A DNA stretch of 49,899 nt from Octopus bimaculoides. Lineage: Eukaryota. The notes below the pieces were generated by a model. That model was not told where the DNA came from and did no database searches. It saw only the letters and a program-made list of their open reading frames with translations. The position numbers and the translations under genes were made by a program. This document shows positions 382 to 49,612 of the stretch, piece by piece. The stretch lies in NCBI RefSeq assembly GCF_001194135.2, contig NC_068982.1, positions 135,866,591 through 135,916,489 of the forward strand, in the 5' to 3' direction. How positions within the stretch are numbered: position 1 is the stretch's first letter; each line of letters begins with the position of its first letter.

Positions 382-784
382 NNNNNNNNNNNNNNNNNNN
401 NNNNNNNNNNNNNNNNNNNNNNNNNNNNNNNNNNNNNNNNNNNNNNNNNNNNNNNNNNNNNNNNNNNNNNNNNNNNNNNNNNNNNNNNNNNNNNNNNNNN
501 NNNNNNNNNNNNNNNNNNNNNNNNNNNNNNNNNNNNNNNNNNNNNNNNNNNNNNNNNNNNNNNNNNNNNNNNNNNNNNNNNNNNNNNNNNNNNNNNNNNN
601 NNNNNNNNNNNNNNNNNNNNNNNNNNNNNNNNNNNNNNNNNNNNNNNNNNNNNNNNNNNNNNNNNNNNNNNNNNNNNNNNNNNNNNNNNNNNNNNNNNNN
701 NNNNNNNNNNNNNNNNNNNNNNNNNNNNNNNNNNNNNNNNNNNNNNNNNNNNNNNNNNNNNNNNNNNNNNNNNNNNNNNNNNNN
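382..784. other. Assembly gap (N run). Other gaps: 25572-26013, 29670-29679, 30722-31035, 36920-37001, 40919-41436, 41779-42081, 47412-47778, 48688-49170
   Basis: Runs of n in the sequence; nearly all abut (TA)n, (CA)n, (GA)n or (CTG)n tracts. Confidence 0.99.
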
Positions 785-1135
785 CTTTAGTCGAGCAAAT
801 CGACCCGAGGACTTATTCTTTAGAAGCCTAGTACTTATTCTATCGGTCTCTTTTGCCGAACCGCTAAGTTACGGGGACATAAACACACCAGCATCGGTTG
901 TCAAGCGATGTTGGGGGGACAAAGACAGACACACAAACACATACACACATACATATATATATACATACATACGACGGGCTTCTTTCAGTTTCCGTCTACC
1001 AAATCCACTCACAAGGCTTTGGTCGGCTCGAGGCTATAGTTGAAGACACTTGCCCAAGATGCCACGCAGTGGGACTGAACCCGGGACCATGTGGTTGGTA
1101 AGCAAGCTACTTACCACACAGCCACTCCTACGCCT
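785..1135 (-). mobile_element. tRNA-derived SINE, family A (CORE-like); 3' end lost in the gap
   Basis: Minus strand reads AGGCGTAGGAGTGGCTGTGTGGTAAG (A-box-like), GGTTCAGTCCC (B-box-like), GGCATCTTGGGCAAGTGTCTT (similar to the start of the MIR/CORE domain), an internal (TA)/(TG) tract, then the 3' half shared with the other family A copies. Confidence 0.9.
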
Positions 1136-3408: not shown

Positions 3409-3715
3409 GTGGCACTACGACGAAGATTCCAGTTGAACCGATCAACGAAACAACCTGCTCATGAAGTTAACCTGCATATGGCAGAGCACTCCACAGACAC
3501 CTGTACCCATAATGTAGTTCTCAGGGAGATTCAGCGTGACACAGAGTGTGAAAACGCTGGCCTTGTGAAATGCAGGTACAGTACAGTTTTGCCATATGAA
3601 TGGACTGGAGCAATTTGAAATAAAGTGTCCTGTTTAAGAACACAACGTGTCAACGGGAATTGAACTCACGACCGAGCGATCGTGTGCCAAATGCCCTAAC
3701 CACCAGGCCACCCGC
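3409..3715 (-). mobile_element. tRNA-derived SINE, family C1
   Basis: Minus strand has TGGCCTGGTGG (A box) and GAGTTCAATTCCC (B box). Its body resembles family D, and its ~170-bp 3' tail (3409-3580) is homologous to 20400-20582. Confidence 0.8.
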
Positions 3716-4497: not shown

Positions 4498-4540
<43 letters not shown>

Positions 4541-4542
<2 letters not shown>

Positions 4543-4928
4543 GCGTGGCTATGTGGTAAAAAGTTTGCTTCTCAAGCACATGGTTCAGGATTCATTTCTA
4601 CTGCGTGGCAACTTGGACAAGTGTCTTCTACTATAGCTTCGGGCCTATCAAAGCCTTGTAAGTGGATTTGGTAAACGGTAACTGAAAGAAGCCCGTCGTA
4701 TATTTCTATATATGTATGTAGTTGCGTGTCTGTGTTTGTCCCCCACCATCGCTTAACAACCGATGTTGGTGTGTTTACATCTCCATATCTTAACGGTTCG
4801 GCAAAAGATGCCGATGGAATAAGTACTAGGCTTACAAAGAATAAATCCTCGGTTCGATTTGGTCTACTAAAAGCAGTGCTCCAGAATAGCCGCAGTCAAA
4901 TGATTGAAACAAGTACAAGAATAAAAGA

Positions 4929-4930
<2 letters not shown>
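4541..4930 (+). mobile_element. SINE family A, near full length, diverged
   Basis: TGGCTATGTGG head, GGCAACTTGGACAAGTGTCTT core, internal TA/TG tract after GAAGCCCGTCG, and a 3' end GCAGTCAAATGATTGAAACAAGTACAAGAATAAAAGAATA. Flanked by (AT)n and (AC)n. Confidence 0.9.
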
Positions 4931-4972
<42 letters not shown>

Positions 4973-11095: not shown

Positions 11096-11353
11096 AATTT
11101 TATCAATTTCAATACTCGATCTTATTCCTTGTAGGATTTACGTGGGTAGCGGGTTACTACCTTATGTGTCCACAAGTTTTCAGCTGTCTTTAAAGTGCTC
11201 GAAACCCTCTTGATAATCCTTGCTGTCACTAAGAGACAAACTTTCTGAAGGAGCTCTACCGGGCATTCTATTCTAATCTCCTTCAGTTTATATCTTTCCT
11301 TACTGTTTCCAACACACCGATTATTTGATGTACGACCTTTACTATTCTCATGC

Positions 11354-11354
<1 letters not shown>
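11096..11354 (-). mobile_element. R4/Dong-type non-LTR retrotransposon 3' fragment (a)
   Basis: Minus-strand translation KLKEIRIECPVELLQKVCLLVTARIIKRV matches the C-terminal LQK..LL.TA.I.RKV motif of RLE-bearing elements. A 3' UTR and TAA tail follow. Confidence 0.75.
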
Positions 11355-11426
<72 letters not shown>

Positions 11427-11436
11427 CATCATTATT
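11355..11436. repeat. (ATT)n/(TAA)n microsatellite between two R4/Dong fragments; a second tract lies at 12101-12164
   Basis: Read directly from the sequence. Confidence 0.98.
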
Positions 11437-12100
11437 CAGTTGTCTTATTTTTATCACGTGCTTTCACTGCACTACCAAGCACTGCTCTGTGTACCTTGGG
11501 TATATGCTGTGGTGTGTTGTGATGCTCTTGTTTTTACAGTATTGAAAGTGTTTTACGTAGGATGTCTGGGGTGCCTATTAGTACTGTTTTCTCAATGTTA
11601 TATACTTGTAAGTCCTGGTATTTTTGTTATGTATTTGTCTGATAGGAATTGTTTCTGTTTTTAGACTCTACATTCGAGTTACCTTTATTTCCATGTCTTC
11701 GCATTTTGAAGAAAATTCCCGTTTCTTTTAGAGAAACAGTTTCATCTGTTGGTATTGATCCAGTGATTAGAAAGCATTTTTTTCCTTCATGGTCTTTGAC
11801 AACTATATCCGGCTTGTTGGCCTTAATTTCTCTGTGTGTATTGGCATATCCCACAGTATGGTTGCCATCTTATTTTCTTTGACCTTTTCTGACGTGTGCC
11901 TCTACCATTTTTTTGGTGTTATTATTCCAGTGTTAGCATAGCTTCCAGTGTATATAGGTCCCAAATCTGTCGTGTCTTTGAATATATTCCTTCTTTGCCA
12001 GGATTGGGCAGCCAGAAACAATATGTTGTGCTGCAAATAAGATTCCTTCAGTCTCTGCTTTGAGTCCTGAGCTTCTCGGCCATTGTTGAGACTTTGCTTT
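11437..12100 (-). mobile_element. R4/Dong-type retrotransposon fragment (b): end of zinc knuckle, RLE endonuclease and 3' UTR; 5'-truncated and internally deleted
   Basis: Minus-strand peptides across stops and frameshifts: SSGLKAETEGILFAAQ / HIVSGCPILAKKEYIQRHDRFGTYIHWKLC / REIKANKPDIVVKDHEGKKCFLI / DKYITKIPGLTSI. These carry the RHD and PD motifs typical of R4-clade ORFs. (TAA)n on both sides. Confidence 0.9.
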
Positions 12101-15930: not shown

Positions 15931-16250
15931 GTATGGCTTAGTGGTTAAGGTGTTGCATTCACGATTGCGAGATCGTGGGTTCGATTCCCAGACAGTGCCG
16001 TTGCGTTGTGTTCTTCAACAAAGCACTTCATTTCAAGTTGCTCTGCGATCATTTCGACCTCTAACACGTGACACCCGTTGTTGCACCTGTACAGGTAATG
16101 TCGATCTGATGGGGGTGAAGAGTGGGGGGTGGCGGGGGATGAGCTTATGTCTACACAAACATTTGATCACTATAAACAATTCATCTGTGTGGGTGTTCAG
16201 TAAGAAATTGTCGATCTCTCATAGGTCGTCTAACGACGGGAGAGTCCATT
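15931..16250 (+). mobile_element. tRNA-derived SINE, family D
   Basis: A box TGGCTTAGTGG (15934-15944) and B box GGTTCGATTCC (15978-15988). Homologous along its length to the reverse complement of 38881-39180. Confidence 0.85.
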
Positions 16251-16263
16251 ATATATATATAAC

Positions 16264-17189
16264 ATACATATTAGATGGATGACCACTAAGTGGACATCCA
16301 TTATGCTAGAAGTAGATCACCTACGATCTGATCACTAAGAATAGATTGTTCTCAAGAAAATTCAGCAAACACTAGAACGTAAGCGAGCAAGACAAATGAA
16401 AAGATACAAAATATATAGAATTAATCATAGACCGGTTTCGCTATTAACGAAATTACTTACGTAATTGTCTGTAGCTCATCAGTATAATCGTTCTTTTGAA
16501 TATAATATGCAGAACTATAAACGAGACGTCCGCATAAAATTAGACATGTATATAGTTCTACCAATTATATTGGAGTTATATTTCAAATTTCTTCGTTTTG
16601 GCGCGCCAAATACCGCCAAATAATTCAGCAGAAGATAATTCACTGCAGAGAATTATATGTATGTAATATAATTTTTCTGAATCTTCAGACTTTTTCAATA
16701 TGCTAGGCCACTGGTTTTAAATTGATATTAATCAGATTAATATTCAAATTACCACCCTTATTATTTAAATTTGTAATAACTATGTTCTCTAACCGGCAAA
16801 ATTCTCTGCAGTGAATTATCTTCTGCAGGATTATTTCCGGTATTTGGCGCGCCAAAACAAAGACATTTGAAATATAACTCCGATATAATTGGTAGAACTA
16901 TATACATGTCTAATTTTATGCGGACGTCTCGTTTATAGTTCTGCATATTATATTCAAAAGAACGATTATACTGATGAGCTACAGACAATTACGTAAGTAA
17001 TTTCGTTAATAGCGAAACCGGTCTATGATTAATTCTATATATTTTGTATCTTTTCATTTGTCTTGCTCGCTTACGTTCTAGTGTTTGCTGAATTTTCTTG
17101 AGAACAATCTATTCTTAGTGGTCAGATCGTAGGTGATTTACTTCTAGCAAAATGGATGTCCACTTACTGGTCATCCATCTAATATGTAT
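16264..17189. repeat. Long inverted repeat: arms 16264-16654 and 16800-17189, 145-bp spacer
   Basis: Hand alignment gives 10 substitutions and 1 indel over ~390 bp (~97%); 16333-16570 is the exact reverse complement of 16883-17120. Confidence 0.98.
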
Positions 17190-17294
17190 ATAATATAATT
17201 TTTCTGAATCTTCAGATATTTTCAATATGCTAGGCCACTGGTTTTAAATTGATATTAATCAGACTAATATTCAATTTGTCACCCTTATTATTTA
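17182..17294 (+). repeat. 113-bp direct repeat of the palindrome spacer segment 16655-16767
   Basis: 7 mismatches in 113 bp (~94%), no indels. Confidence 0.97.
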
Positions 17295-19410
17295 TATATA
17301 CATATATTACAGATATGTGTATACATACATATATGACTTTGTGTGCATGTGTATATATATGTATATGGAAGTGTGTATATACAATTATGCATTCGTGAAT
17401 ACAGATCTGTATGTCTGCGTGTGTGTCTGTGTATGTATCAGTGCCGCGTGAAGATATGAGTGAGTCTATGTTTCTAGTTTCAATGAACGCTATTATTTTA
17501 TCATGAACCCTCCGCACTCTCCATACGTCTCACTATGGACAACTACACTGTTGATCTACATTTATTCTCCCGAACCTAATAGTCCAGTTCCTTACAGCTT
17601 ACTAACCCTTTCAATTTTATTTATAGTTCTCCTACAAATACTTCATAATCCATGGCTCTAAGCACACTTAGTTGTATATTCATTCTGAACTCTATTCTTA
17701 TACAATTACAATTCACCTTGTGATTGCAATTATATTTCTTTGTCGTAAGTTTCCTGCCGTTTCTGGACAGCCATCTCACCTTTTTCACTACCTGAGCCAC
17801 TACTTTGACCATCACTGTCCTACATGTTGCTTCTTTCAATATCTGACTACCCCCTCACGATGCATACCTCTTTCCATACCATTCATTCGCATATTGGTTC
17901 TTCCCTGTCCACTCATACCTATCTCAAAGTTCATTCTTCAAATATTCTTGTATCTTTCTGCCAAACTCAAACCCTTTAATTGTTTCTCTCTCGTTGAAGT
18001 ATATCAAATATCCGAAGCCTTAAACAGTTCTCCTTCTCAATAACACATGTTCTCTATCTATTCAAACTATTATTAATATAGGTGTCTCACTTTGACATAA
18101 ACTTTTAAGTTGTAATATGCGGTATTTTAAAATCAATTACATTCGCATTATAAACTGGGAGTTTATAGAATCTTATCGAAGTTCCGCAAAGAATTCATTT
18201 CGTACACTACCAGTTATCATACCATGAACCTTTTAAAATGTAACTAATATTGAAATGTACCTACTCCCATCATACCACGGAATTTCATTTACTATTTCAT
18301 TAGTAAGGTCCCATTTCGTTACGTGTTCATCTCTGGCAGTTCGTGTTGGGCACGTATCAGTGCAGAAATAAGCTACATTCCGTACCTAGTCTTGAATACT
18401 ACAGCTCACATACAGAATAGCAAGATGATTGTCTCAAATGCGTTTTACTCTTCATTTCATTAAATATAAAGGTATATAAAAGTATTCAATGTCAGCTAAT
18501 CGCAAGATAAATAAAGAACTAGCGGAACGATAACTATCTTGTTGACTGATATGAATCGTTCCTTACAAAAATGATTTATTAATTTAACCATTAGTTTTAT
18601 ACGTTCGTTAACAACGAAGTTGTGATTGTGTCCTGCGTAACAATAAGAATAAGTTGCAACATTTGAATGTACTTGTGTTAGTTAATTACTTTTCTTTCTT
18701 GTTTGTGGCTAAGGACAAAAAAAGTTGTAAAACAATCATATTGTAAAATATAATTTATGTGATTAACATTTAAATTCTTAATAAATTTAATATACTAAAC
18801 ATTTCCTGCGTGATTTCTCAGAGGAAAACACATAAACACATAAACACACACAGGGGTAGTTCGGGTCTGTGCAGTTACTTTATATCCCAAGGTCTAATTA
18901 TCTGAGTTGGCCTTCGTTTCAATTTAGAATCCGCAGAACCGCAGAATTAGCGACACAGAAACACTAACTTTAAATGAATTAATACAAAGTGCTATTTTGT
19001 TGAATACTTTCATCCCACATCTTATAAACTGAAACAAATCTACACACACACCCACGCATACACACACATATCTCACAAGCTGCAAATTCTCTCCGTTCTC
19101 CATCTTGCAAGACATTTTCTGAGCGTTATCCACTATTCTATTCTCCTTCGCCCCAATGCCATAATTTGGTCGGCAATTGGTCCTTGCCCACCGTCCTAAA
19201 TCCCACTCTGTGTTATTTTCCTTTTTTTGTTTTGTTTTATTGTCATCTCCAGTTCTCCGCAAGAAAACTTTTTTCGAGCACTGCCAACTGGGAAGCGCCC
19301 AGTCTAATCGTCAAAGGTGCGAAACTGAATATTACTAATTGGACGATAATTGATGAAGAAATTATGAACCATAGGTTTTTACATTCAGTATACGCCATGT
19401 AGTTTGTTTA

Positions 19411-19640
19411 TTTACTCTTTACTCTTTTACTCTTTTACTTATTTTAGTCATTTGACTGCGGCCGTGATGGAGCACCGCCTTTAGTGGAGCAAATCGAGCC
19501 CAGGACTTATTTTTTGTAAGCCTAGTACTTAGTCTATCGGTCTCTTTTGCCGAACCGCTAAGTTACGGGGATATAAACACACTAGCATCGGTTGTCAAGC
19601 GATGTTGGGGGGGGGGGAAACACAAACACACAAACACACA

Positions 19641-19704
<64 letters not shown>

Positions 19705-19868
19705 AACATATATACGACGGGCTTCTTCCAGTCTACGTCTACCAAATCCACTCACAAGGATTTGCTCGGCCGGAGTCTGTAGTAGAAGACACTTGCCCAA
19801 GGTGCTACGCAGTGTGAGTGAACCCGGAACCATGTGGTTGGTAAGCTAGCTACTTACCACACAGCCAC
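19411..19868 (-). mobile_element. SINE family A, near full length, with tandem (GAGTAAAA)n 3' tail
   Basis: Homologous to 785-1135 and 49178-49560. Internal (CA)n/(TA)n tract at about 19620-19715; TTTACTC repeats at 19411-19439. Confidence 0.92.
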
Positions 19869-20204
19869 TTTTGCGACAATACATTTTTTCATTTAAGTAA
19901 TGGAAAGCAACGCACACCGAATTTCTACATGCATACATACATACATACATACATACATGTATGTATGTATGTATATGTATGTATATAGATGTATTAATAG
20001 ATGCGCATACATATACATGCATACATACATAAGAACATACATACAAACATACATACATACATGAATACCCACACATATCCATCCTTATATTCATGCATAC
20101 ATGGGTATATCTATCTATCCGCCTATCTATCAGTCAATCTGTCTATCTGTCTGCCAGCATGTCTGTTTGTGTGTGTGTGTGGCTTCGTGTGTACATATTT
20201 GTGT

Positions 20205-20582
20205 GGAGGCGCAAAGGCCAGTGGTTAAAGCAGCGGACTCATGGGCGTAGGATCGCGGTTTCGATTCCTTGACCGGGCGTTGTGGGTTTTTATTGAGCGA
20301 AAACCCCCTACACTCCACGAGGCCCCGGCAGGGGGTAGATTGAACTCTGCAGTACTCTTTCACCACAATTTTCTCACACTTTTTCTTCCCGTTTCTGTTG
20401 TACATGTATTTCAAAGGGTCAGCCTTGTCACACCCTGTGTCACGCTGAATATCCCTGAGATCTACGTTAAGGGTACACATGTCTGTGGCGTGCTGAGCCA
20501 CTTGCACGTTAATTTCACGAGAAAGCTGTTCCGTTGATCCGATCAATTGGAACCCTCGTCTTCGTAGCTGACGGAATGCCAC
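20205..20582 (+). mobile_element. tRNA-derived SINE, family C2, full length
   Basis: GGAGGCGCAAAGGCCAGTGGTTAAAG head and GGTTTCGATTCC B box. The body is unique among copies here; the 3' tail is shared with 3409-3580. Confidence 0.85.
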
Positions 20583-20957
20583 GACCACATATTTGTAAAT
20601 AAATGCAGATAATTTTCTTGGGAGATTTTTTGCAGGGTAGAAAGAAATCATATTTAAGTTTATTACAGGAAAATATATAAGTAAACACAATTTCATAATA
20701 GCAACTATTACTCAAAAACGCAGTGTGACTCAAATATGCAAAATGTGTAAGCGCTGTACACTTAGAAGCGTAGTATAGAAGATGAAGTTACCGTATACCG
20801 CTCCAGCGAGGCAGACGATGAGTAAAGCACTAAGTAGAGAGAGTCCTGATAAAATTGTCTTTGACTCCATGTGACGGCAGAAAACTGAAAAACAAAAGAG
20901 AAAACGAAAGGTTAAACAGTATGAACAACTTGTGTCTTATGTTCAAATGTCTATCTC

Positions 20958-25370: not shown

Positions 25371-26013
25371 AGGCACAGTAGTGGCTGTGTGGTAAGAAGT
25401 TTGCTTTCCTACCACAGGTTTCCGGGTTCAGTCCCACTGCGTGGCACTTTGGGCAAGTGTCTTCTACTATAGCGTCGGGCCGACCAAAACGTTGTGCGTG
25501 GATTTGGTAGACGGAAACTGAAAGAAACCCGTCATGTGTGTATATATTTATATATATATATATATATATATNNNNNNNNNNNNNNNNNNNNNNNNNNNNN
25601 NNNNNNNNNNNNNNNNNNNNNNNNNNNNNNNNNNNNNNNNNNNNNNNNNNNNNNNNNNNNNNNNNNNNNNNNNNNNNNNNNNNNNNNNNNNNNNNNNNNN
25701 NNNNNNNNNNNNNNNNNNNNNNNNNNNNNNNNNNNNNNNNNNNNNNNNNNNNNNNNNNNNNNNNNNNNNNNNNNNNNNNNNNNNNNNNNNNNNNNNNNNN
25801 NNNNNNNNNNNNNNNNNNNNNNNNNNNNNNNNNNNNNNNNNNNNNNNNNNNNNNNNNNNNNNNNNNNNNNNNNNNNNNNNNNNNNNNNNNNNNNNNNNNN
25901 NNNNNNNNNNNNNNNNNNNNNNNNNNNNNNNNNNNNNNNNNNNNNNNNNNNNNNNNNNNNNNNNNNNNNNNNNNNNNNNNNNNNNNNNNNNNNNNNNNNN
26001 NNNNNNNNNNNNN

Positions 26014-27160: not shown

Positions 27161-27187
27161 TATTATTATTGTTATAATAATAATAAT

Positions 27188-27239
<52 letters not shown>

Positions 27240-27242
27240 GTA

Positions 27243-27323
<81 letters not shown>

Positions 27324-27326
27324 GTT

Positions 27327-27409
<83 letters not shown>
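27161..27409. repeat. (AAT)n followed directly by (ATT)n, a self-complementary trinucleotide tract
   Basis: The polarity switch is centred at 27288/27289 (AATAATAA|TTATTATT). Confidence 0.95.
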
Positions 27410-29669: not shown

Positions 29670-29679
29670 NNNNNNNNNN

Positions 29680-30638: not shown

Positions 30639-31093
30639 CGTTCCTTTGTCTCAGAAGGTCAAGCTGTATTTCGTTGACGAGAAAATATAATGGCGGAAGT
30701 GGTTTTATAAGAGCAAGGCTANNNNNNNNNNNNNNNNNNNNNNNNNNNNNNNNNNNNNNNNNNNNNNNNNNNNNNNNNNNNNNNNNNNNNNNNNNNNNNN
30801 NNNNNNNNNNNNNNNNNNNNNNNNNNNNNNNNNNNNNNNNNNNNNNNNNNNNNNNNNNNNNNNNNNNNNNNNNNNNNNNNNNNNNNNNNNNNNNNNNNNN
30901 NNNNNNNNNNNNNNNNNNNNNNNNNNNNNNNNNNNNNNNNNNNNNNNNNNNNNNNNNNNNNNNNNNNNNNNNNNNNNNNNNNNNNNNNNNNNNNNNNNNN
31001 NNNNNNNNNNNNNNNNNNNNNNNNNNNNNNNNNNNATATATACTTACGAATATATATACATAAATACGTGTGTATATGTACATATATACATAC

Positions 31094-36392: not shown

Positions 36393-37001
36393 GTATGTTT
36401 ATATATGAAGAGAAAGAAATCTATTAATGAATTACGTCCAGTTTGCAGTTGACATTTAGTCAATCGTAGATCCGTTTCCTTGACAAAATATGCTGATCAA
36501 TTAACCTTATTCTTTCAATGAATATTTTATTTGATTCTATATCTTTCTCTAGATTATCGCAATTGCATTCAAAATATATTTCCATATGCTCCAACGTATA
36601 ACAACAAGCAATAGTGTTGAATCGGTTCACGATTATAAAGTGCTAAAATCTCTAACTGGATTGCTTCTGTCAATCAGTTTTGCATAACTTCATCATCACA
36701 AATTTTTAAAAATCTCCTTAGCAACTGATACTTCATTTCATTATTTCGTTTTATTTGTATCTCTAGGGATCATAACATGATTCCCTTACTGATACGTGAG
36801 TTTATTTCAGTATTGGATTAAACTGCATTAGGTAAAACTTCAAATCCCAGTCAATATTCCTACAAGTTATGTGTGTGTGTGTGTGTACGCTAATCCATGT
36901 ATATATATATATATATATANNNNNNNNNNNNNNNNNNNNNNNNNNNNNNNNNNNNNNNNNNNNNNNNNNNNNNNNNNNNNNNNNNNNNNNNNNNNNNNNN
37001 N

Positions 37002-38868: not shown

Positions 38869-38880
38869 TATATAAATATA

Positions 38881-39180
38881 TGATGGACTCTCCCGTCATG
38901 AGACGATGTATGAGGATTCGACAATTTCTTACCGAACAAGCAGAGAGTTTATTTGTTTATAGTGATTAAATGTTTGTGTATACTTAAGCTCACTCCCTCC
39001 ATCAAATCGACATTGCCTGTACAGGTGCAACGGGTGCCACATGTTAGATGATGAAATGATCGCAGAGCAACGTGAAATGAAGTGCTTTGCTCAAGAATAC
39101 AACACAACACCCGGTCTGGGAACCGAGCACACGATCTCGCAATCATGAGTGCAACACCTTAATCACTGAGTCATGTGCCT
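38881..39180 (-). mobile_element. SINE family D
   Basis: Reverse complement is collinear with 15931-16250. Confidence 0.85.
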
Positions 39181-39471
39181 TCAAGAAGGATAATGCACAA
39201 AGTTTACATAGTTATGATATATTTTAAATGAAAGAGTATTGTGGTTGTCGATCAGTTTCACTTTCGCTAATCATGACATTGAAGTTATTGTAATTTCGTA
39301 TTTCCTTAAGAAGATTTTTGTCCTTGTTCTTGTATGAAAGTTTGCGAACGAATCAAGTAGAAAACTCTCATATATCCTTTATCCTTTATCTTTTTGACTA
39401 AGGTCGTGCCGGGATCCCACCTTCATGACATTTTTAGTGGAAAGAATCCACACTAGTAATTATTTCTTTTT

Positions 39472-39733
39472 AAGCTTGGTAGTTATTCTATCGGACTTTT
39501 GCCGAACCGCTAGTTTACGGAGATGTAAACACACTAACAGCAGTTGTTAAGGGGAGTTAAAAGACAAAAAAAAAACGCATACATACGCACACAGACACAC
39601 ACAAACACAGATACATACACACACGCACAAATACACACAACACACACATATATACGGGATTCTTTCAGTTTCTGTCTACCAAATCCACTCAGAAATGTTT
39701 GGTCGACCTGAGGTTATAGAAGAAGTTACTTGT
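39472..39733 (-). mobile_element. SINE family A lacking its tRNA head and its 3' end
   Basis: TTTTGCCGAACCGCTAG and TCTTTCAGTTTCTGTCTACCAAATCCACTC are present around an internal (CA) tract. Confidence 0.85.
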
Positions 39734-39734
39734 A

Positions 39735-40050
39735 CTAGATAAGATGCTTTTATTTTGCTGGCCTCAAATCTCGTTTGCGAACCCATAGAAAATGACCCTC
39801 CACCAACTATTCTGCCTATATGTCTGTGCACCCCTTTCAACGCAATGTATGCTAGAAGATCTGCAAATCTCACGGAGGCCTCAAAAGACAGTTTAAGATC
39901 CACAAATATTAGAACTTAAATGCAGCTCTTGGTGGTCCAAGAGGACATGCAATCTATGTGGGTATCTTTTCAAAACATTGTTTGATTATAAAAGCCACAT
40001 CAGACACCATGAAAGATCTCACATATAAGAACAAGAGATGGTCAGGAGTA
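39735..40050 (+). pseudogene. Decayed array of three C2H2 zinc fingers (LINE C-terminus or ZNF pseudogene fragment)
   Basis: RCFYFAGLKSRLRTH; HPFQRNVC*KICKSHGGLKRQFKIH; after a frameshift, CNLCGYLFKTLFDYKSHIRHH (39948-40010) with intact C-x2-C-x3-F-x5-Y-x2-H-x3-H spacing. Confidence 0.7.
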
Positions 40051-41436
40051 GACAACTACCATGATTTTATTTTAGAAAACCATCTTTACCAAATATATGA
40101 AAACATCCTTTGTCCAAAACCTAGTAAATTACGACTATAACGCTGTAATTCGTGACGTTTATGAGGCCGACTGTATGAAGGACAAGGTCACTGAGCAGCT
40201 ATCCTGAAAACCCTGAATCGAGGAGCTGAATGAGAAAATTGTGTTTAGCGGTCGTTACTCAATGCAATACGGGTACGAACGAAGCCTATTTTGGTGACAT
40301 ATGTATTGTAGAGCAAAGGATTAATAGAGGGAAGACGAGTTGTACATTAAAAAATATCAAGTGAAATCAAATGACCTAGGTCGCTTGTCGGCTTATATTA
40401 AAAATACAATAATTCTTATATCACCTTTCAGTAAAATATATTATACATACACATTCAAACATTAGAAATGTATTATATATATTTATTTATATAGTATACC
40501 TAAAATAGAGTATCTTTATATGTTATGTTTGTAGACTTTCGCTCTTATAGAATAAGTGCAGAGAACTCAATACCTAGCGTAGTGTAAATATATGATATAT
40601 ACCAGTTCAAATCACTTAAAGTATAAACCTTCTCTCGAAGTTTCATGCAGAGGTAGCTTTAATCAGAGAAGGCTTTTACTGGTAGATTTAGTGGTGCGAT
40701 CGGATGCGCATAGACATATACATTTAAATCAACGATATAATTTCATTCTCTCGCACGCTCCCTGTCTGTCTGTTTGTACACACACACACGTACACACACA
40801 AACAAACAAACACACACACACACACACTCTCACACACACACACACTCTCACACACACACAGAACACTTGAAAATCTTTTGTGCTTTTTATCGAACAAATG
40901 AACAACTGACTGATATATNNNNNNNNNNNNNNNNNNNNNNNNNNNNNNNNNNNNNNNNNNNNNNNNNNNNNNNNNNNNNNNNNNNNNNNNNNNNNNNNNN
41001 NNNNNNNNNNNNNNNNNNNNNNNNNNNNNNNNNNNNNNNNNNNNNNNNNNNNNNNNNNNNNNNNNNNNNNNNNNNNNNNNNNNNNNNNNNNNNNNNNNNN
41101 NNNNNNNNNNNNNNNNNNNNNNNNNNNNNNNNNNNNNNNNNNNNNNNNNNNNNNNNNNNNNNNNNNNNNNNNNNNNNNNNNNNNNNNNNNNNNNNNNNNN
41201 NNNNNNNNNNNNNNNNNNNNNNNNNNNNNNNNNNNNNNNNNNNNNNNNNNNNNNNNNNNNNNNNNNNNNNNNNNNNNNNNNNNNNNNNNNNNNNNNNNNN
41301 NNNNNNNNNNNNNNNNNNNNNNNNNNNNNNNNNNNNNNNNNNNNNNNNNNNNNNNNNNNNNNNNNNNNNNNNNNNNNNNNNNNNNNNNNNNNNNNNNNNN
41401 NNNNNNNNNNNNNNNNNNNNNNNNNNNNNNNNNNNN

Positions 41437-41778: not shown

Positions 41779-42081
41779 NNNNNNNNNNNNNNNNNNNNNN
41801 NNNNNNNNNNNNNNNNNNNNNNNNNNNNNNNNNNNNNNNNNNNNNNNNNNNNNNNNNNNNNNNNNNNNNNNNNNNNNNNNNNNNNNNNNNNNNNNNNNNN
41901 NNNNNNNNNNNNNNNNNNNNNNNNNNNNNNNNNNNNNNNNNNNNNNNNNNNNNNNNNNNNNNNNNNNNNNNNNNNNNNNNNNNNNNNNNNNNNNNNNNNN
42001 NNNNNNNNNNNNNNNNNNNNNNNNNNNNNNNNNNNNNNNNNNNNNNNNNNNNNNNNNNNNNNNNNNNNNNNNNNNNNNNNN

Positions 42082-47320: not shown

Positions 47321-47778
47321 GCGTATATATGCGTATATATGTGTGCGTGTGCGTATATGTGTGTGTGTGTGTGTGTGAATATATGTGTGTGTGTGTGAAT
47401 ATATGTATATANNNNNNNNNNNNNNNNNNNNNNNNNNNNNNNNNNNNNNNNNNNNNNNNNNNNNNNNNNNNNNNNNNNNNNNNNNNNNNNNNNNNNNNNN
47501 NNNNNNNNNNNNNNNNNNNNNNNNNNNNNNNNNNNNNNNNNNNNNNNNNNNNNNNNNNNNNNNNNNNNNNNNNNNNNNNNNNNNNNNNNNNNNNNNNNNN
47601 NNNNNNNNNNNNNNNNNNNNNNNNNNNNNNNNNNNNNNNNNNNNNNNNNNNNNNNNNNNNNNNNNNNNNNNNNNNNNNNNNNNNNNNNNNNNNNNNNNNN
47701 NNNNNNNNNNNNNNNNNNNNNNNNNNNNNNNNNNNNNNNNNNNNNNNNNNNNNNNNNNNNNNNNNNNNNNNNNNNNNN

Positions 47779-48681: not shown

Positions 48682-49177
48682 TCTTTTNNNNNNNNNNNNN
48701 NNNNNNNNNNNNNNNNNNNNNNNNNNNNNNNNNNNNNNNNNNNNNNNNNNNNNNNNNNNNNNNNNNNNNNNNNNNNNNNNNNNNNNNNNNNNNNNNNNNN
48801 NNNNNNNNNNNNNNNNNNNNNNNNNNNNNNNNNNNNNNNNNNNNNNNNNNNNNNNNNNNNNNNNNNNNNNNNNNNNNNNNNNNNNNNNNNNNNNNNNNNN
48901 NNNNNNNNNNNNNNNNNNNNNNNNNNNNNNNNNNNNNNNNNNNNNNNNNNNNNNNNNNNNNNNNNNNNNNNNNNNNNNNNNNNNNNNNNNNNNNNNNNNN
49001 NNNNNNNNNNNNNNNNNNNNNNNNNNNNNNNNNNNNNNNNNNNNNNNNNNNNNNNNNNNNNNNNNNNNNNNNNNNNNNNNNNNNNNNNNNNNNNNNNNNN
49101 NNNNNNNNNNNNNNNNNNNNNNNNNNNNNNNNNNNNNNNNNNNNNNNNNNNNNNNNNNNNNNNNNNNNNTATATATA

Positions 49178-49560
49178 GTGTCTGGGTGGTAAATAGCTTG
49201 CTTACCAACAACATGGTTTCTGGTTCAGTCCCACTGCGTGGCACCTTGGGCAAGTGTTTTCTACTATAGCCTCGGGCCGACCAAAGCCTTGTGAGGGAAT
49301 TTGGTAGATGGAAACTGTAAGAAGCCCGTCGTATATATATATATATATATAGATATATATGTATGTGTATGTTTGTGTGTGTGTGTTTGTCTTCCAACAT
49401 AGCTTGGCAACCGATGCTGGTAACATAGCGGTTCGGCAAAAGAGACCGATAGAAGAAGTACTAGGCTTACAAAGAATAAGTTCATGGGTCACTTTGCTTG
49501 AATAAAGGCAATGCTCCAGCATGGCCGCAGTCAAATGACCGAAACAAGTAAAAGAATAAA
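49178..49560 (+). mobile_element. SINE family A, near full length
   Basis: GGTTCAGTCCCACTGCGTGGCACCTTGGGCAAGTG, an internal (TA)/(TG) tract, and the 3' end CAGCATGGCCGCAGTCAAATGACCGAAACAAGTAAAAGAATAAA. Confidence 0.92.
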
Positions 49561-49566
49561 CGAATA

Positions 49567-49612
<46 letters not shown>

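What the first reader, a model, noticed from the sequence alone, without database searches (positions are those of the whole stretch)
16264..17294. 926-bp palindrome with A-B-c-A(inverted)-B architecture and an 8-bp junction microhomology
Seen: arm A (16264-16654) and its inverse (16800-17189) are ~97% identical. The first 113 bp of the spacer (B, 16655-16767) recur as a direct repeat immediately after the right arm (17182-17294). A begins with ATACATAT, and its reverse complement ATATGTAT is both the start of B and the last 8 bp of the right arm. A 32-bp segment c (16768-16799) has no partner that I could find. Inference: this is not a TIR transposon (no target-site duplication, and the spacer is duplicated outside). 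It fits a two-switch replication template-switch event: copy A-B-c, switch strands and copy A backwards, then re-anneal at the 8-bp microhomology and resume at B.
Basis: partly seen in the sequence, partly recalled or inferred. Interest (0 to 1): 0.75.

Follow-up and report, generated by a model that had tools for sequence, protein, structure and literature searches.

The report
Local inverted duplication beside a SINE
A 0.5-kb stretch of non-coding animal DNA was copied backwards into its own middle by a replication or repair slip, leaving a roughly 930-bp palindrome; this is a real but ordinary one-off rearrangement scar with no sign of being a mobile element or a gene.

Summary
Arms 16264-16654 and 16800-17189 are 97% complementary. 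B (16655-16767) recurs at 17182-17294 at 94%. c (16768-16799) has no partner. No other copy of A, B or c lies in the window.

New facts:
- The left arm starts exactly at the tail of a SINE-like repeat, and the right end abuts a TA/TG microsatellite, so target-site duplications cannot be judged.
- The 8-bp microhomology is part of a 16-bp (15/16) inverted repeat bracketing the A body. It was probably 10 bp when used.
- All 11 arm differences lie in the arm ends (7.2%, like B at 6.2%). A 238-bp core is perfect (P=0.0003), which suggests later arm-to-arm gene conversion.

With the 145-bp spacer flipped, the structure is an inverted copy of A+B plus 32 nt of filler, inserted at the A|B boundary. 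I favour that single-site switch-and-return event followed by a spacer flip (0.45).

No related sequence could be fetched, so ancestry, copy number and assembly correctness remain untested. Interest is low.

The parts
15933..16263 (+). SINE-like interspersed repeat forming the left flank. It has pol III A-box-like (15934-15944) and B-box-like (15978-15988) motifs and a (TA)n tail ending at about 16263.
   Evidence: 79% identical over 330 bp to 39174-38871 on the other strand. Motifs located. ARAGORN and Rfam do not call it a tRNA.
16256..16271 (.). IRL, the left half of a short inverted repeat (TATATAACATACATAT). Its last 10 bases, ACATACATAT, are the reverse complement of the start of B.
   Evidence: 15/16 complementary to 16655-16670. 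It is the only site within 1 kb upstream of B that gives 8 bp or more of inverted overlap.
16264..16654 (+). Arm A, the left arm of the palindrome. The A body 16272-16654 is exactly the spacer between IRL and IRR.
16275..16301 (.). 27-nt local palindrome near the outer end of arm A, mirrored at 17152-17178.
   Evidence: DNA fold -10.2 kcal/mol, z = -3.7, 0 of 200 shuffles as stable.
16333..16570 (.). 238-bp core of the arms that is 100% identical to 16883-17120. Presumed arm-to-arm gene-conversion tract.
   Evidence: All 11 arm differences lie outside it. P(longest identical run of 238 or more) = 0.0003.
16655..16767 (+). B1, the first 113 bp of the spacer. It starts with IRR (16655-16670, ATATGTATGTAATATA).
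   Evidence: 93.8% identical to 17182-17294.
16768..16799 (+). c, 32 nt of filler with no identifiable template.
   Evidence: No partner in the window. No exact match longer than 10 nt within 14.5-19.5 kb.
16800..17189 (-). Arm A', the inverted copy of A.
17182..17191 (.). Junction microhomology between the end of A' and the start of B2. It is 8 bp now (ATATGTAT) and inferred to have been 10 bp (ATATGTATGT), because both possible templates carry G where 17190 now has A.
   Evidence: Sequence. Difference 16663 G vs 17190 A. Overlap test.
17182..17294 (+). B2, the direct repeat of B1 immediately after the right arm.
17295..17440 (.). TA/TG-rich microsatellite-like tract forming the right flank.
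   Evidence: Sequence. Tandem repeat 17315-17376. Only weak sub-threshold low-complexity miRNA-model matches.

Best explanation
This is a one-off local rearrangement scar in non-coding, repeat-rich eukaryotic DNA. It is not a mobile element.

Inferred history:
1. The ancestral order was SINE tail - A - B - microsatellite.
2. DNA synthesis stalled or broke at the A|B boundary (16654|16655). This could have been at a replication fork or during break repair.
3. The free 3' end picked up 32 nt of filler (c, read on the other strand).
4. It then switched to the opposite strand at the end of B and copied B and then A backwards (504 nt).
5. When it had copied the ACATACATAT at the start of A, its new end (ATATGTATGT) matched the start of B. 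It re-annealed there and resumed exactly where it had left.
6. The product was A - c' - B' - A' - B, switch-point order 3-1-4-2.
7. Later the two 390-bp arms recombined with each other. This homogenised a 238-bp core and flipped the 145-bp spacer, giving today's A - B - c - A' - B.

Shown: the architecture, the microhomology, the pre-existing short inverted repeat, the uneven divergence and the adjacency of the two switch points.

Inferred: the ancestral state, the order of events, the spacer flip and the enzymology.
For: 1. Local origin. The spacer's first 113 bp repeat directly outside the right arm. No other copy of A, B or c is in the window. The copies (97%, 94%) are more alike than any dispersed repeat pair here, which are 74-90%.
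2. Microhomology. The A'-to-B2 junction overlaps by 8 bp now, and by 10 bp against B1. Random junction pairs in this window reach 8 bp or more in only 0.04% of trials. IRL is the only matching site within 1 kb upstream of B.
3. Adjacency. The inverted copy begins at 16654 and the resumed copy at 16655. A single departure-and-return site predicts exactly this. Flipping the spacer B-c turns the sequence into A + c' + rc(A+B) + B, in which rc(A+B) is one contiguous inverted copy.
4. Event class. Order 3-1-4-2 is a class seen in human-chimpanzee data. Orders in which point 4 precedes point 1 were not seen (PMC5453318).
5. Arm interaction. All 11 arm differences lie in the outer 69 bp and inner 84 bp, and 238 bp are perfect (P=0.0003). 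The arm ends (7.2%) match B1/B2 (6.2%), Fisher P=0.81. This fits one event of one age followed by conversion of the core. At about 6.7% divergence, zero differences in 238 bp has a chance near 7e-8 (my arithmetic).
6. Precedent. Arm-to-arm gene conversion with occasional spacer inversion is documented in palindromes (PMC3723533).
7. Assembly. The arms are diverged, there is a 145-bp spacer, and unique sequence continues for kilobases on both sides within one gap-free stretch, 785-25571. This argues against a chimeric-read artefact.
Against: - No outgroup, second individual or genome-wide copy count could be obtained. The ancestral state A-B is therefore assumed.
- The history needs two steps, and the spacer flip leaves no testable trace in this one sequence.
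- The 32-nt filler c has no identified template.
- In Loytynoja & Goldman, 3-1-4-2 events are rare (1% of events) and tens of bases long, not 504 nt.
- The microhomology motif is one of the commonest 8-mers in the window.
- The perfect core could in principle come from the assembler merging similar paths rather than from gene conversion.
Confidence: 0.45

Rival explanations
1. Synthesis copies A-B, adds c, switches strand and copies A backwards from 16654 to 16264. It then re-anneals through the microhomology at the start of B and copies B a second time. Read in the opposite direction, the first switch goes through the 16-bp inverted repeat and the second lands 113 bp behind with 32 nt of filler. 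This is the logic proposed for DUP-TRP/INV-DUP rearrangements.
For: It gives the observed sequence with no later flip. The microhomology is real. The arm ends and B have equal divergence, which fits one event. At kb-Mb scale, a first switch at an inverted repeat followed by a second junction with microhomology or insertion is an established model (PMC11293582).
Against: The switch-point order is 3-2-4-1, so point 4 precedes point 1. That class was not observed among the 794 filtered human-chimp candidate events (PMC5453318). It also needs the start of the inverted copy (16654) to fall next to the return point (16655) by coincidence, roughly 1 in 100 or less for independent landing sites (the figure is my own estimate).
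Confidence: 0.15
2. A mobile element. Either a foldback or long-TIR MITE (A - loop - A') inserted into the TA-rich SINE tail, or A itself is a small element present twice in opposite orientation.
For: The arms are long terminal inverted repeats with a short loop. Both outer borders lie in TA-rich sequence, where a TA or TATATA target-site duplication cannot be excluded. There is a significant 27-nt palindrome near the outer end of each arm. One 47-kb window says little about genome-wide copy number.
Against: The loop's first 113 bp duplicate the DNA just outside the right arm, which a transposon insertion does not predict. No other copy is in the window. The arms are far more alike than the dispersed families here. 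Helitron-like ends fail: the homology between copies runs 7-8 bp past CTAA|T and 3-4 bp before TC. Two independent insertions of A at the same base next to two B copies would be a large coincidence.
Confidence: 0.12
3. A two-stage history with an older direct repeat. B-c-B existed first as a 145-bp-period tandem duplication. An inverted copy of A was later inserted at the c|B2 boundary by a switch-and-return event of order 3-2-1-4.
For: 3-2-1-4 (with its mirror case) is a common class, 31% of events (PMC5453318). Overall B divergence (6.2%) exceeds overall arm divergence (2.8%).
Against: That difference is not significant (Fisher P=0.14). The unconverted arm ends (7.2%) are as diverged as B, which argues for the same age. 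It still needs the inverted copy to start at the base homologous to the insertion point, which is unexplained.
Confidence: 0.08
4. An assembly artefact of a short-read draft scaffold. This could be a mis-joined inverted repeat, a wrongly oriented spacer, or a core made identical by merging of similar graph paths.
For: The window has 9 N-gaps, typical of short-read scaffolding. The 238-bp perfect core exceeds typical short-read lengths, so arm phasing and spacer orientation rest on read pairs.
Against: The arms differ at 11 sites and B at 7. There is a 145-bp unique spacer and long unique flanks in one gap-free stretch. Chimeric-read palindromes are expected to be near-perfect and spacer-less (general knowledge). 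Merging about 16 expected differences seems unlikely (my own judgement).
Confidence: 0.07

Closest known systems
Short-range template-switch mutations (four-point model; Loytynoja & Goldman 2017, PMC5453318)
   Same: [quoted passage not shown] After a spacer flip the structure is a 3-1-4-2 event with points 1 and 4 adjacent.
   Different: The copied fragment is 504 nt rather than tens of nt. There are 32 nt of untemplated filler at the first switch. The present spacer orientation needs a later flip, or else belongs to a class (4 before 1) not observed in that study.
MMBIR/FoSTeS-type complex rearrangements, e.g. DUP-TRP/INV-DUP (PMC11293582)
   Same: Two template switches. One goes through a pre-existing inverted repeat. 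The other junction carries microhomology or a small insertion. An inverted segment lies between direct copies.
   Different: Here the inverted repeat is 16 bp rather than kilobase-scale low-copy repeats. The segments are 0.1-0.4 kb rather than kb-Mb. Nothing is triplicated: A is present once direct and once inverted, and B twice direct.
Fold-back inverted duplications with a single-copy spacer (Hermetz et al. 2014, PMC3907307) and templated inverted insertions at yeast double-strand breaks (PMC11724301)
   Same: An inverted duplication separated from its source by a short spacer. Short inverted sequence lies at the boundary. One end is extended by synthesis and the other captured by end joining or microhomology.
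   Different: Simple intrastrand fold-back cannot produce the extra direct copy of B. There is no terminal deletion. The yeast events are mostly 5-34 bp.
Large palindromes with arm-to-arm gene conversion and spacer inversion (e.g. human Y palindrome P6, PMC3723533)
   Same: The arms are homogenised by conversion, which would explain the perfect 238-bp core. Crossover between arms inverts the spacer.
   Different: The arms here are 0.39 kb rather than tens to hundreds of kb. No genes are involved. Conversion here is inferred from one sequence only.
Foldback transposons and long-TIR MITEs
   Same: Long inverted arms around a short loop, sitting in TA-rich DNA.
   Different: The loop repeats the outside flank. 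No family members were found. The target-site duplication is undecidable. The arms are not made of subrepeats.

Membership tests
Template-switch / MMBIR-type local rearrangement | The inserted segment is a reverse-complement copy of sequence from the same locus. | tested here: met
   A' is 97% identical to rc(A), which lies 145 bp away. With the spacer flipped, rc(A+B) is one contiguous 504-nt copy.
Template-switch / MMBIR-type local rearrangement | Microhomology at a switch junction beyond chance. | tested here: met
   8 bp now and 10 bp against B1. P(8 bp or more) = 0.0004 for random junction pairs in this window. The other junction carries 32 nt of filler instead.
Template-switch / MMBIR-type local rearrangement | An ancestral or allelic state that lacks the inverted copy. 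| not testable with these tools
   No related sequence was found in any reachable collection.
Template-switch / MMBIR-type local rearrangement | A switch-point order of an observed class, in which the return is not behind the departure. | tested here: inconclusive
   As assembled the order is 3-2-4-1, an unobserved class. With the spacer flipped it is 3-1-4-2, an observed class. The flip cannot be tested here.
Foldback transposon / long-TIR MITE | Target-site duplication flanking the terminal inverted repeats. | tested here: inconclusive
   Both borders are TA-rich low complexity. TA or TATATA matches are at chance level.
Foldback transposon / long-TIR MITE | Multiple dispersed copies with different flanks. 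| tested here: inconclusive
   There is no other copy in 46.9 kb, but one window has little power. Genome-wide copy number was not testable.
Foldback transposon / long-TIR MITE | Internal sequence unrelated to the insertion-site flank. | tested here: not met
   The first 113 bp of the loop repeat the DNA directly outside the right arm.
Helitron | 5' TC and 3' CTRR ends with a subterminal hairpin, with the element boundaries coinciding with the limits of homology between copies. | tested here: not met
   A hairpin plus CTAA|T exists at 17152-17185. However, the homology between the two copies continues 7-8 bp beyond CTAA and begins 3-4 bp before TC.
Inversion by staggered breaks with inverted duplications at the breakpoints | Both duplicated breakpoint segments are in inverted orientation. 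| tested here: not met
   B1 and B2 are direct repeats.
DUP-TRP/INV-DUP / ODIRA inverted triplication | The same segment present three times in the order direct - inverted - direct. | tested here: not met
   A is present twice (direct and inverted) and B twice (both direct). Nothing is present three times.
Tandem duplication followed by inversion through the 16-bp inverted repeat | A copy of IRL retained to the left of the inverted A body. | tested here: not met
   The sequence left of A' is ...CTCTAACCGGCAA, not TATATAACATACATAT.

The most novel reading that the evidence does not exclude
The palindrome is transcribed and works as a hairpin-RNA (endogenous siRNA) gene newly born from a template switch. 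On this reading the perfect 238-bp core is kept by selection for a flawless double-stranded stem rather than by neutral gene conversion. Nothing here tests expression. No Rfam family matches.
Probability: 0.04. Interest if true: 0.55.

Novelty: new member of a known kind. Interest (0 to 1): 0.22.

Why it matters
If the reconstruction holds, this locus is a clean natural record of three things:
- a half-kilobase switch-and-return template switch in an invertebrate-like genome;
- the role of a pre-existing 10-16-bp inverted repeat at a SINE tail in that switch;
- small palindromes undergoing arm-to-arm conversion and spacer flipping, as the giant sex-chromosome palindromes do.

That is useful as an example for people who model complex mutations, but it does not open a new question. 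It is also a caution for scanning. The order of blocks in a palindrome can hide a simpler history, because the spacer can flip. Microhomology and target-site arguments are weak in microsatellite-rich DNA unless they are tested against the local background.

Tried and rejected
Searches that found nothing:
- External relatives. Four exact-ORF look-ups, two homology searches with the arm ORF and the left-flank ORF, and exact 23-36-mers of A, B and the SINE in metagenome and viral contigs all returned nothing.
- RNA genes. There are no Rfam matches at gathering score in the window, and only sub-threshold low-complexity hits near the locus. ARAGORN finds no tRNA.
- Origin of c. There is no template of 11 nt or more within 5 kb. 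The 8-10-nt matches are at chance level. c is not rc(B start) and does not resemble the right flank (by eye).
- Exon hunt, aimed at fetching orthologous loci through a gene. A six-frame ORF survey showed only repeat-derived and low-complexity ORFs.

Models considered and rejected:
- Helitron. A hairpin plus CTAA|T is present, but the element ends do not coincide with the limits of homology.
- Tandem duplication followed by inversion through the 16-bp inverted repeat. No IRL copy lies left of A'.
- Staggered-break inversion. B1 and B2 are direct, not inverted.
- Simple fold-back at a break. It cannot make the second B.
- A longer palindrome cut by the SINE. There is no rc(B) upstream of the SINE.
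- Junction-proximal error-prone synthesis as the cause of the clustered differences. About 7% is far above what I recall for break-induced replication, which I did not look up. I therefore prefer an old event with conversion of the core.

Full report
**Observation**

- The repeat finder reports inverted arms 16256-16615 / 16838-17197 (360 nt, 98%) and 16618-16654 / 16800-16836 (37 nt, 95%).
- It also reports a direct repeat 16655-16770 / 17182-17297 at 93%.
- blastn joins the arms into one 399-nt alignment at 96.7% and finds no further copy of A, B or c in the 49.9-kb window.
- A starts with ATACATAT. The right arm ends with ATATGTAT, which is also the start of B2.
- It is the only long non-microsatellite inverted repeat in the window.

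**Context**

The window is a draft eukaryotic scaffold.
- It has nine N-gaps, about 33% G+C, dense TA/CA/TATG microsatellites and several dispersed repeat families at 74-90% pairwise identity.
- From memory it looks like a cephalopod mollusc. I could not test that.
- No convincing exon is visible.

The left flank is a SINE-like repeat, 15933-16261. It is 79% identical to an inverted copy at 38871-39174. It carries A- and B-box-like motifs, although ARAGORN and Rfam do not call it a tRNA. Its (TA)n tail ends at about 16263, so arm A begins exactly where the SINE ends.

The right flank, 17295-17440, is TA/TG microsatellite-like. Both outer borders therefore sit in low-complexity DNA.

**The microhomology**

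ATATGTAT and its complement occur 42 times in 46.9 kb, ranking 44th of 25,234 8-mers. The motif itself is therefore unremarkable. The overlap is still meaningful, for three reasons:
- Only 0.04% of random inverted/direct junction pairs in this window overlap by 8 bp or more.
- The site at 16262-16271 is the only one within 1 kb upstream of B that matches it.
- The motif is part of a 16-bp inverted repeat at 15/16: IRL 16256-16271 and IRR 16655-16670. The A body, 16272-16654, is exactly its spacer.

Both possible templates carry G where 17190 now has A. The overlap was therefore most likely 10 bp (ATATGTATGT) when it was used.

**Uneven divergence**

- All 11 arm differences lie in the outer 69 bp (4 differences) or the inner 84 bp (7 differences).
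- The central 238 bp (16333-16570 = 16883-17120) are identical. P = 0.0003 under uniform scatter.
- The arm ends diverge by 7.2% and B1/B2 by 6.2% (Fisher P = 0.81).
- At that divergence, zero differences in 238 bp has a chance of about 7e-8.

The simplest reading is one event of one age, followed by arm-to-arm gene conversion of the core. Conversion of this kind is documented for large palindromes, where crossovers between arms also occasionally invert the spacer (PMC3723533). Error-prone synthesis near the junctions seems too weak to give 7%. Merging of graph paths by the assembler is a less likely alternative.

**Mechanism**

- departure at 16767;
- inverted copy from 16654 to 16264;
- return at 16655.

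That is order 3-2-4-1, in which the return lies behind the departure. The authors did not observe any class with point 4 before point 1 among the 794 candidate events they classified. They argue that such a return would require reopening the newly made duplex (PMC5453318).

The path also leaves a coincidence unexplained. The inverted copy begins at 16654, and the resumed copy begins at the very next base.

Inverting the 145-bp spacer removes both problems. The sequence A-B-c-A'-B becomes A-c'-B'-A'-B. That is the ancestral A|B with one insertion at the boundary: 32 nt of filler plus a single contiguous reverse-complement copy of A+B (504 nt). The return is primed by the 10-bp match between rc(IRL) and the start of B. 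This is order 3-1-4-2 with points 1 and 4 adjacent, which is an observed, if rare, class.

A break-repair version gives the same product:
1. A double-strand break occurs at 16654|16655.
2. The left end is extended on the sister chromatid in inverted orientation.
3. The right end is captured through the IRL/IRR match.

Templated inverted insertions at breaks, and switches mediated by inverted repeats, are both documented (PMC11724301; PMC11293582).

The later flip is the expected by-product of recombination between the arms, and the perfect core is independent evidence of such recombination. Sequence alone cannot separate them.

**Other rivals**

- Transposon. The loop copies the outside flank, there are no other copies in the window, and the arms are much more alike than the dispersed families here. 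One window is weak evidence on copy number, so I keep this at 0.12.
- Helitron-like ends. A significant 27-nt hairpin followed by CTAA|T is present. However, homology between the copies runs past both putative ends.
- Tandem duplication followed by inversion through the inverted repeat. This fails because no IRL copy lies left of A'.
- Staggered-break inversion. This fails because B1 and B2 are direct repeats.
- Inverted triplication. This fails because nothing is present three times.
- Older B-c-B repeat with later insertion of A' (0.08). The equal divergence of the arm ends and B does not favour it.
- Assembly artefact (0.07). This is unlikely given the diverged arms, the spacer and the long unique flanks in one gap-free stretch (785-25571). 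It cannot be excluded for a short-read draft, and the spacer orientation in particular rests on read pairs.

**What could not be done**

Every attempt to reach related sequence failed:
- exact-ORF look-ups;
- homology searches with the arm ORF and the left-flank ORF;
- exact k-mers of A, B and the SINE in metagenome and viral contigs.

The filler c has no template of 11 nt or more within 5 kb.

**Verdict**

This is a real, well-defined local inverted duplication of a known general kind: template switching or microhomology-mediated repair, followed by palindrome arm conversion. It lies in non-coding DNA and shows no sign of function.

The specific path is probably not the simplest one.

Interest is low, at about 0.2.

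Noticed in passing
window 15933-16263 (+) and 38871-39174 (-): Two copies (79% identical) of a SINE-like repeat about 330 bp long. The copy next to the finding has pol III A-box-like (TGGCTTAGTGG, 15934-15944) and B-box-like (GGTTCGATTCC, 15978-15988) motifs, and both copies end in a short TA-rich tail. ARAGORN and Rfam do not recognise it as a tRNA.
   Followed up: partly
window 785-1135, 4539-4931, 19420-19869, 25371-25569, 39433-39732, 49176-49606: At least six copies (74-89% identical) of a second interspersed repeat family. The copies are regularly followed by TA/CA microsatellites, and several sit at the edges of N-gaps.
   Followed up: no
window 27162-27409: A microsatellite palindrome. 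A (TAA)n run switches to (TTA)n at about 27289, giving 120-nt arms 90-95% complementary with a 0-4 nt spacer. Retroelement-like ORF fragments ('IECPVELLQKV...') lie beside it and at 11122-11457.
   Followed up: no
window 16597-16610 and 16843-16856: Each arm carries the perfect 14-bp palindrome TTTGGCGCGCCAAA, the only two GGCGCGCC sites in the window. From memory it resembles overlapping E2F-type sites. This was not tested.
   Followed up: no
window 382-784, 25572-26013, 29670-29679, 30722-31035, 36920-37001, 40919-41436, 41779-42081, 47412-47778, 48688-49169: Nine runs of N, mostly flanked by microsatellites. The window is a scaffolded short-read draft, so repeat structure near the gaps is unreliable. 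The finding lies in the longest gap-free stretch.
   Followed up: yes
window about 39900-40060 (+): One reading frame contains a single C2H2 zinc-finger-like pattern, CNLCGYLFKTLFDYKSHIRHH (C-x2-C-x12-H-x3-H). It could be a stray exon, a transposon remnant or chance.
   Followed up: no
window 3419-3580 (+) and 20399-20560 (-): Another dispersed repeat pair (81% identical). It underlies the longest non-repetitive-looking ORF in the window (20130-20696, 188 aa), so that ORF is probably repeat-derived and not a gene.
   Followed up: no
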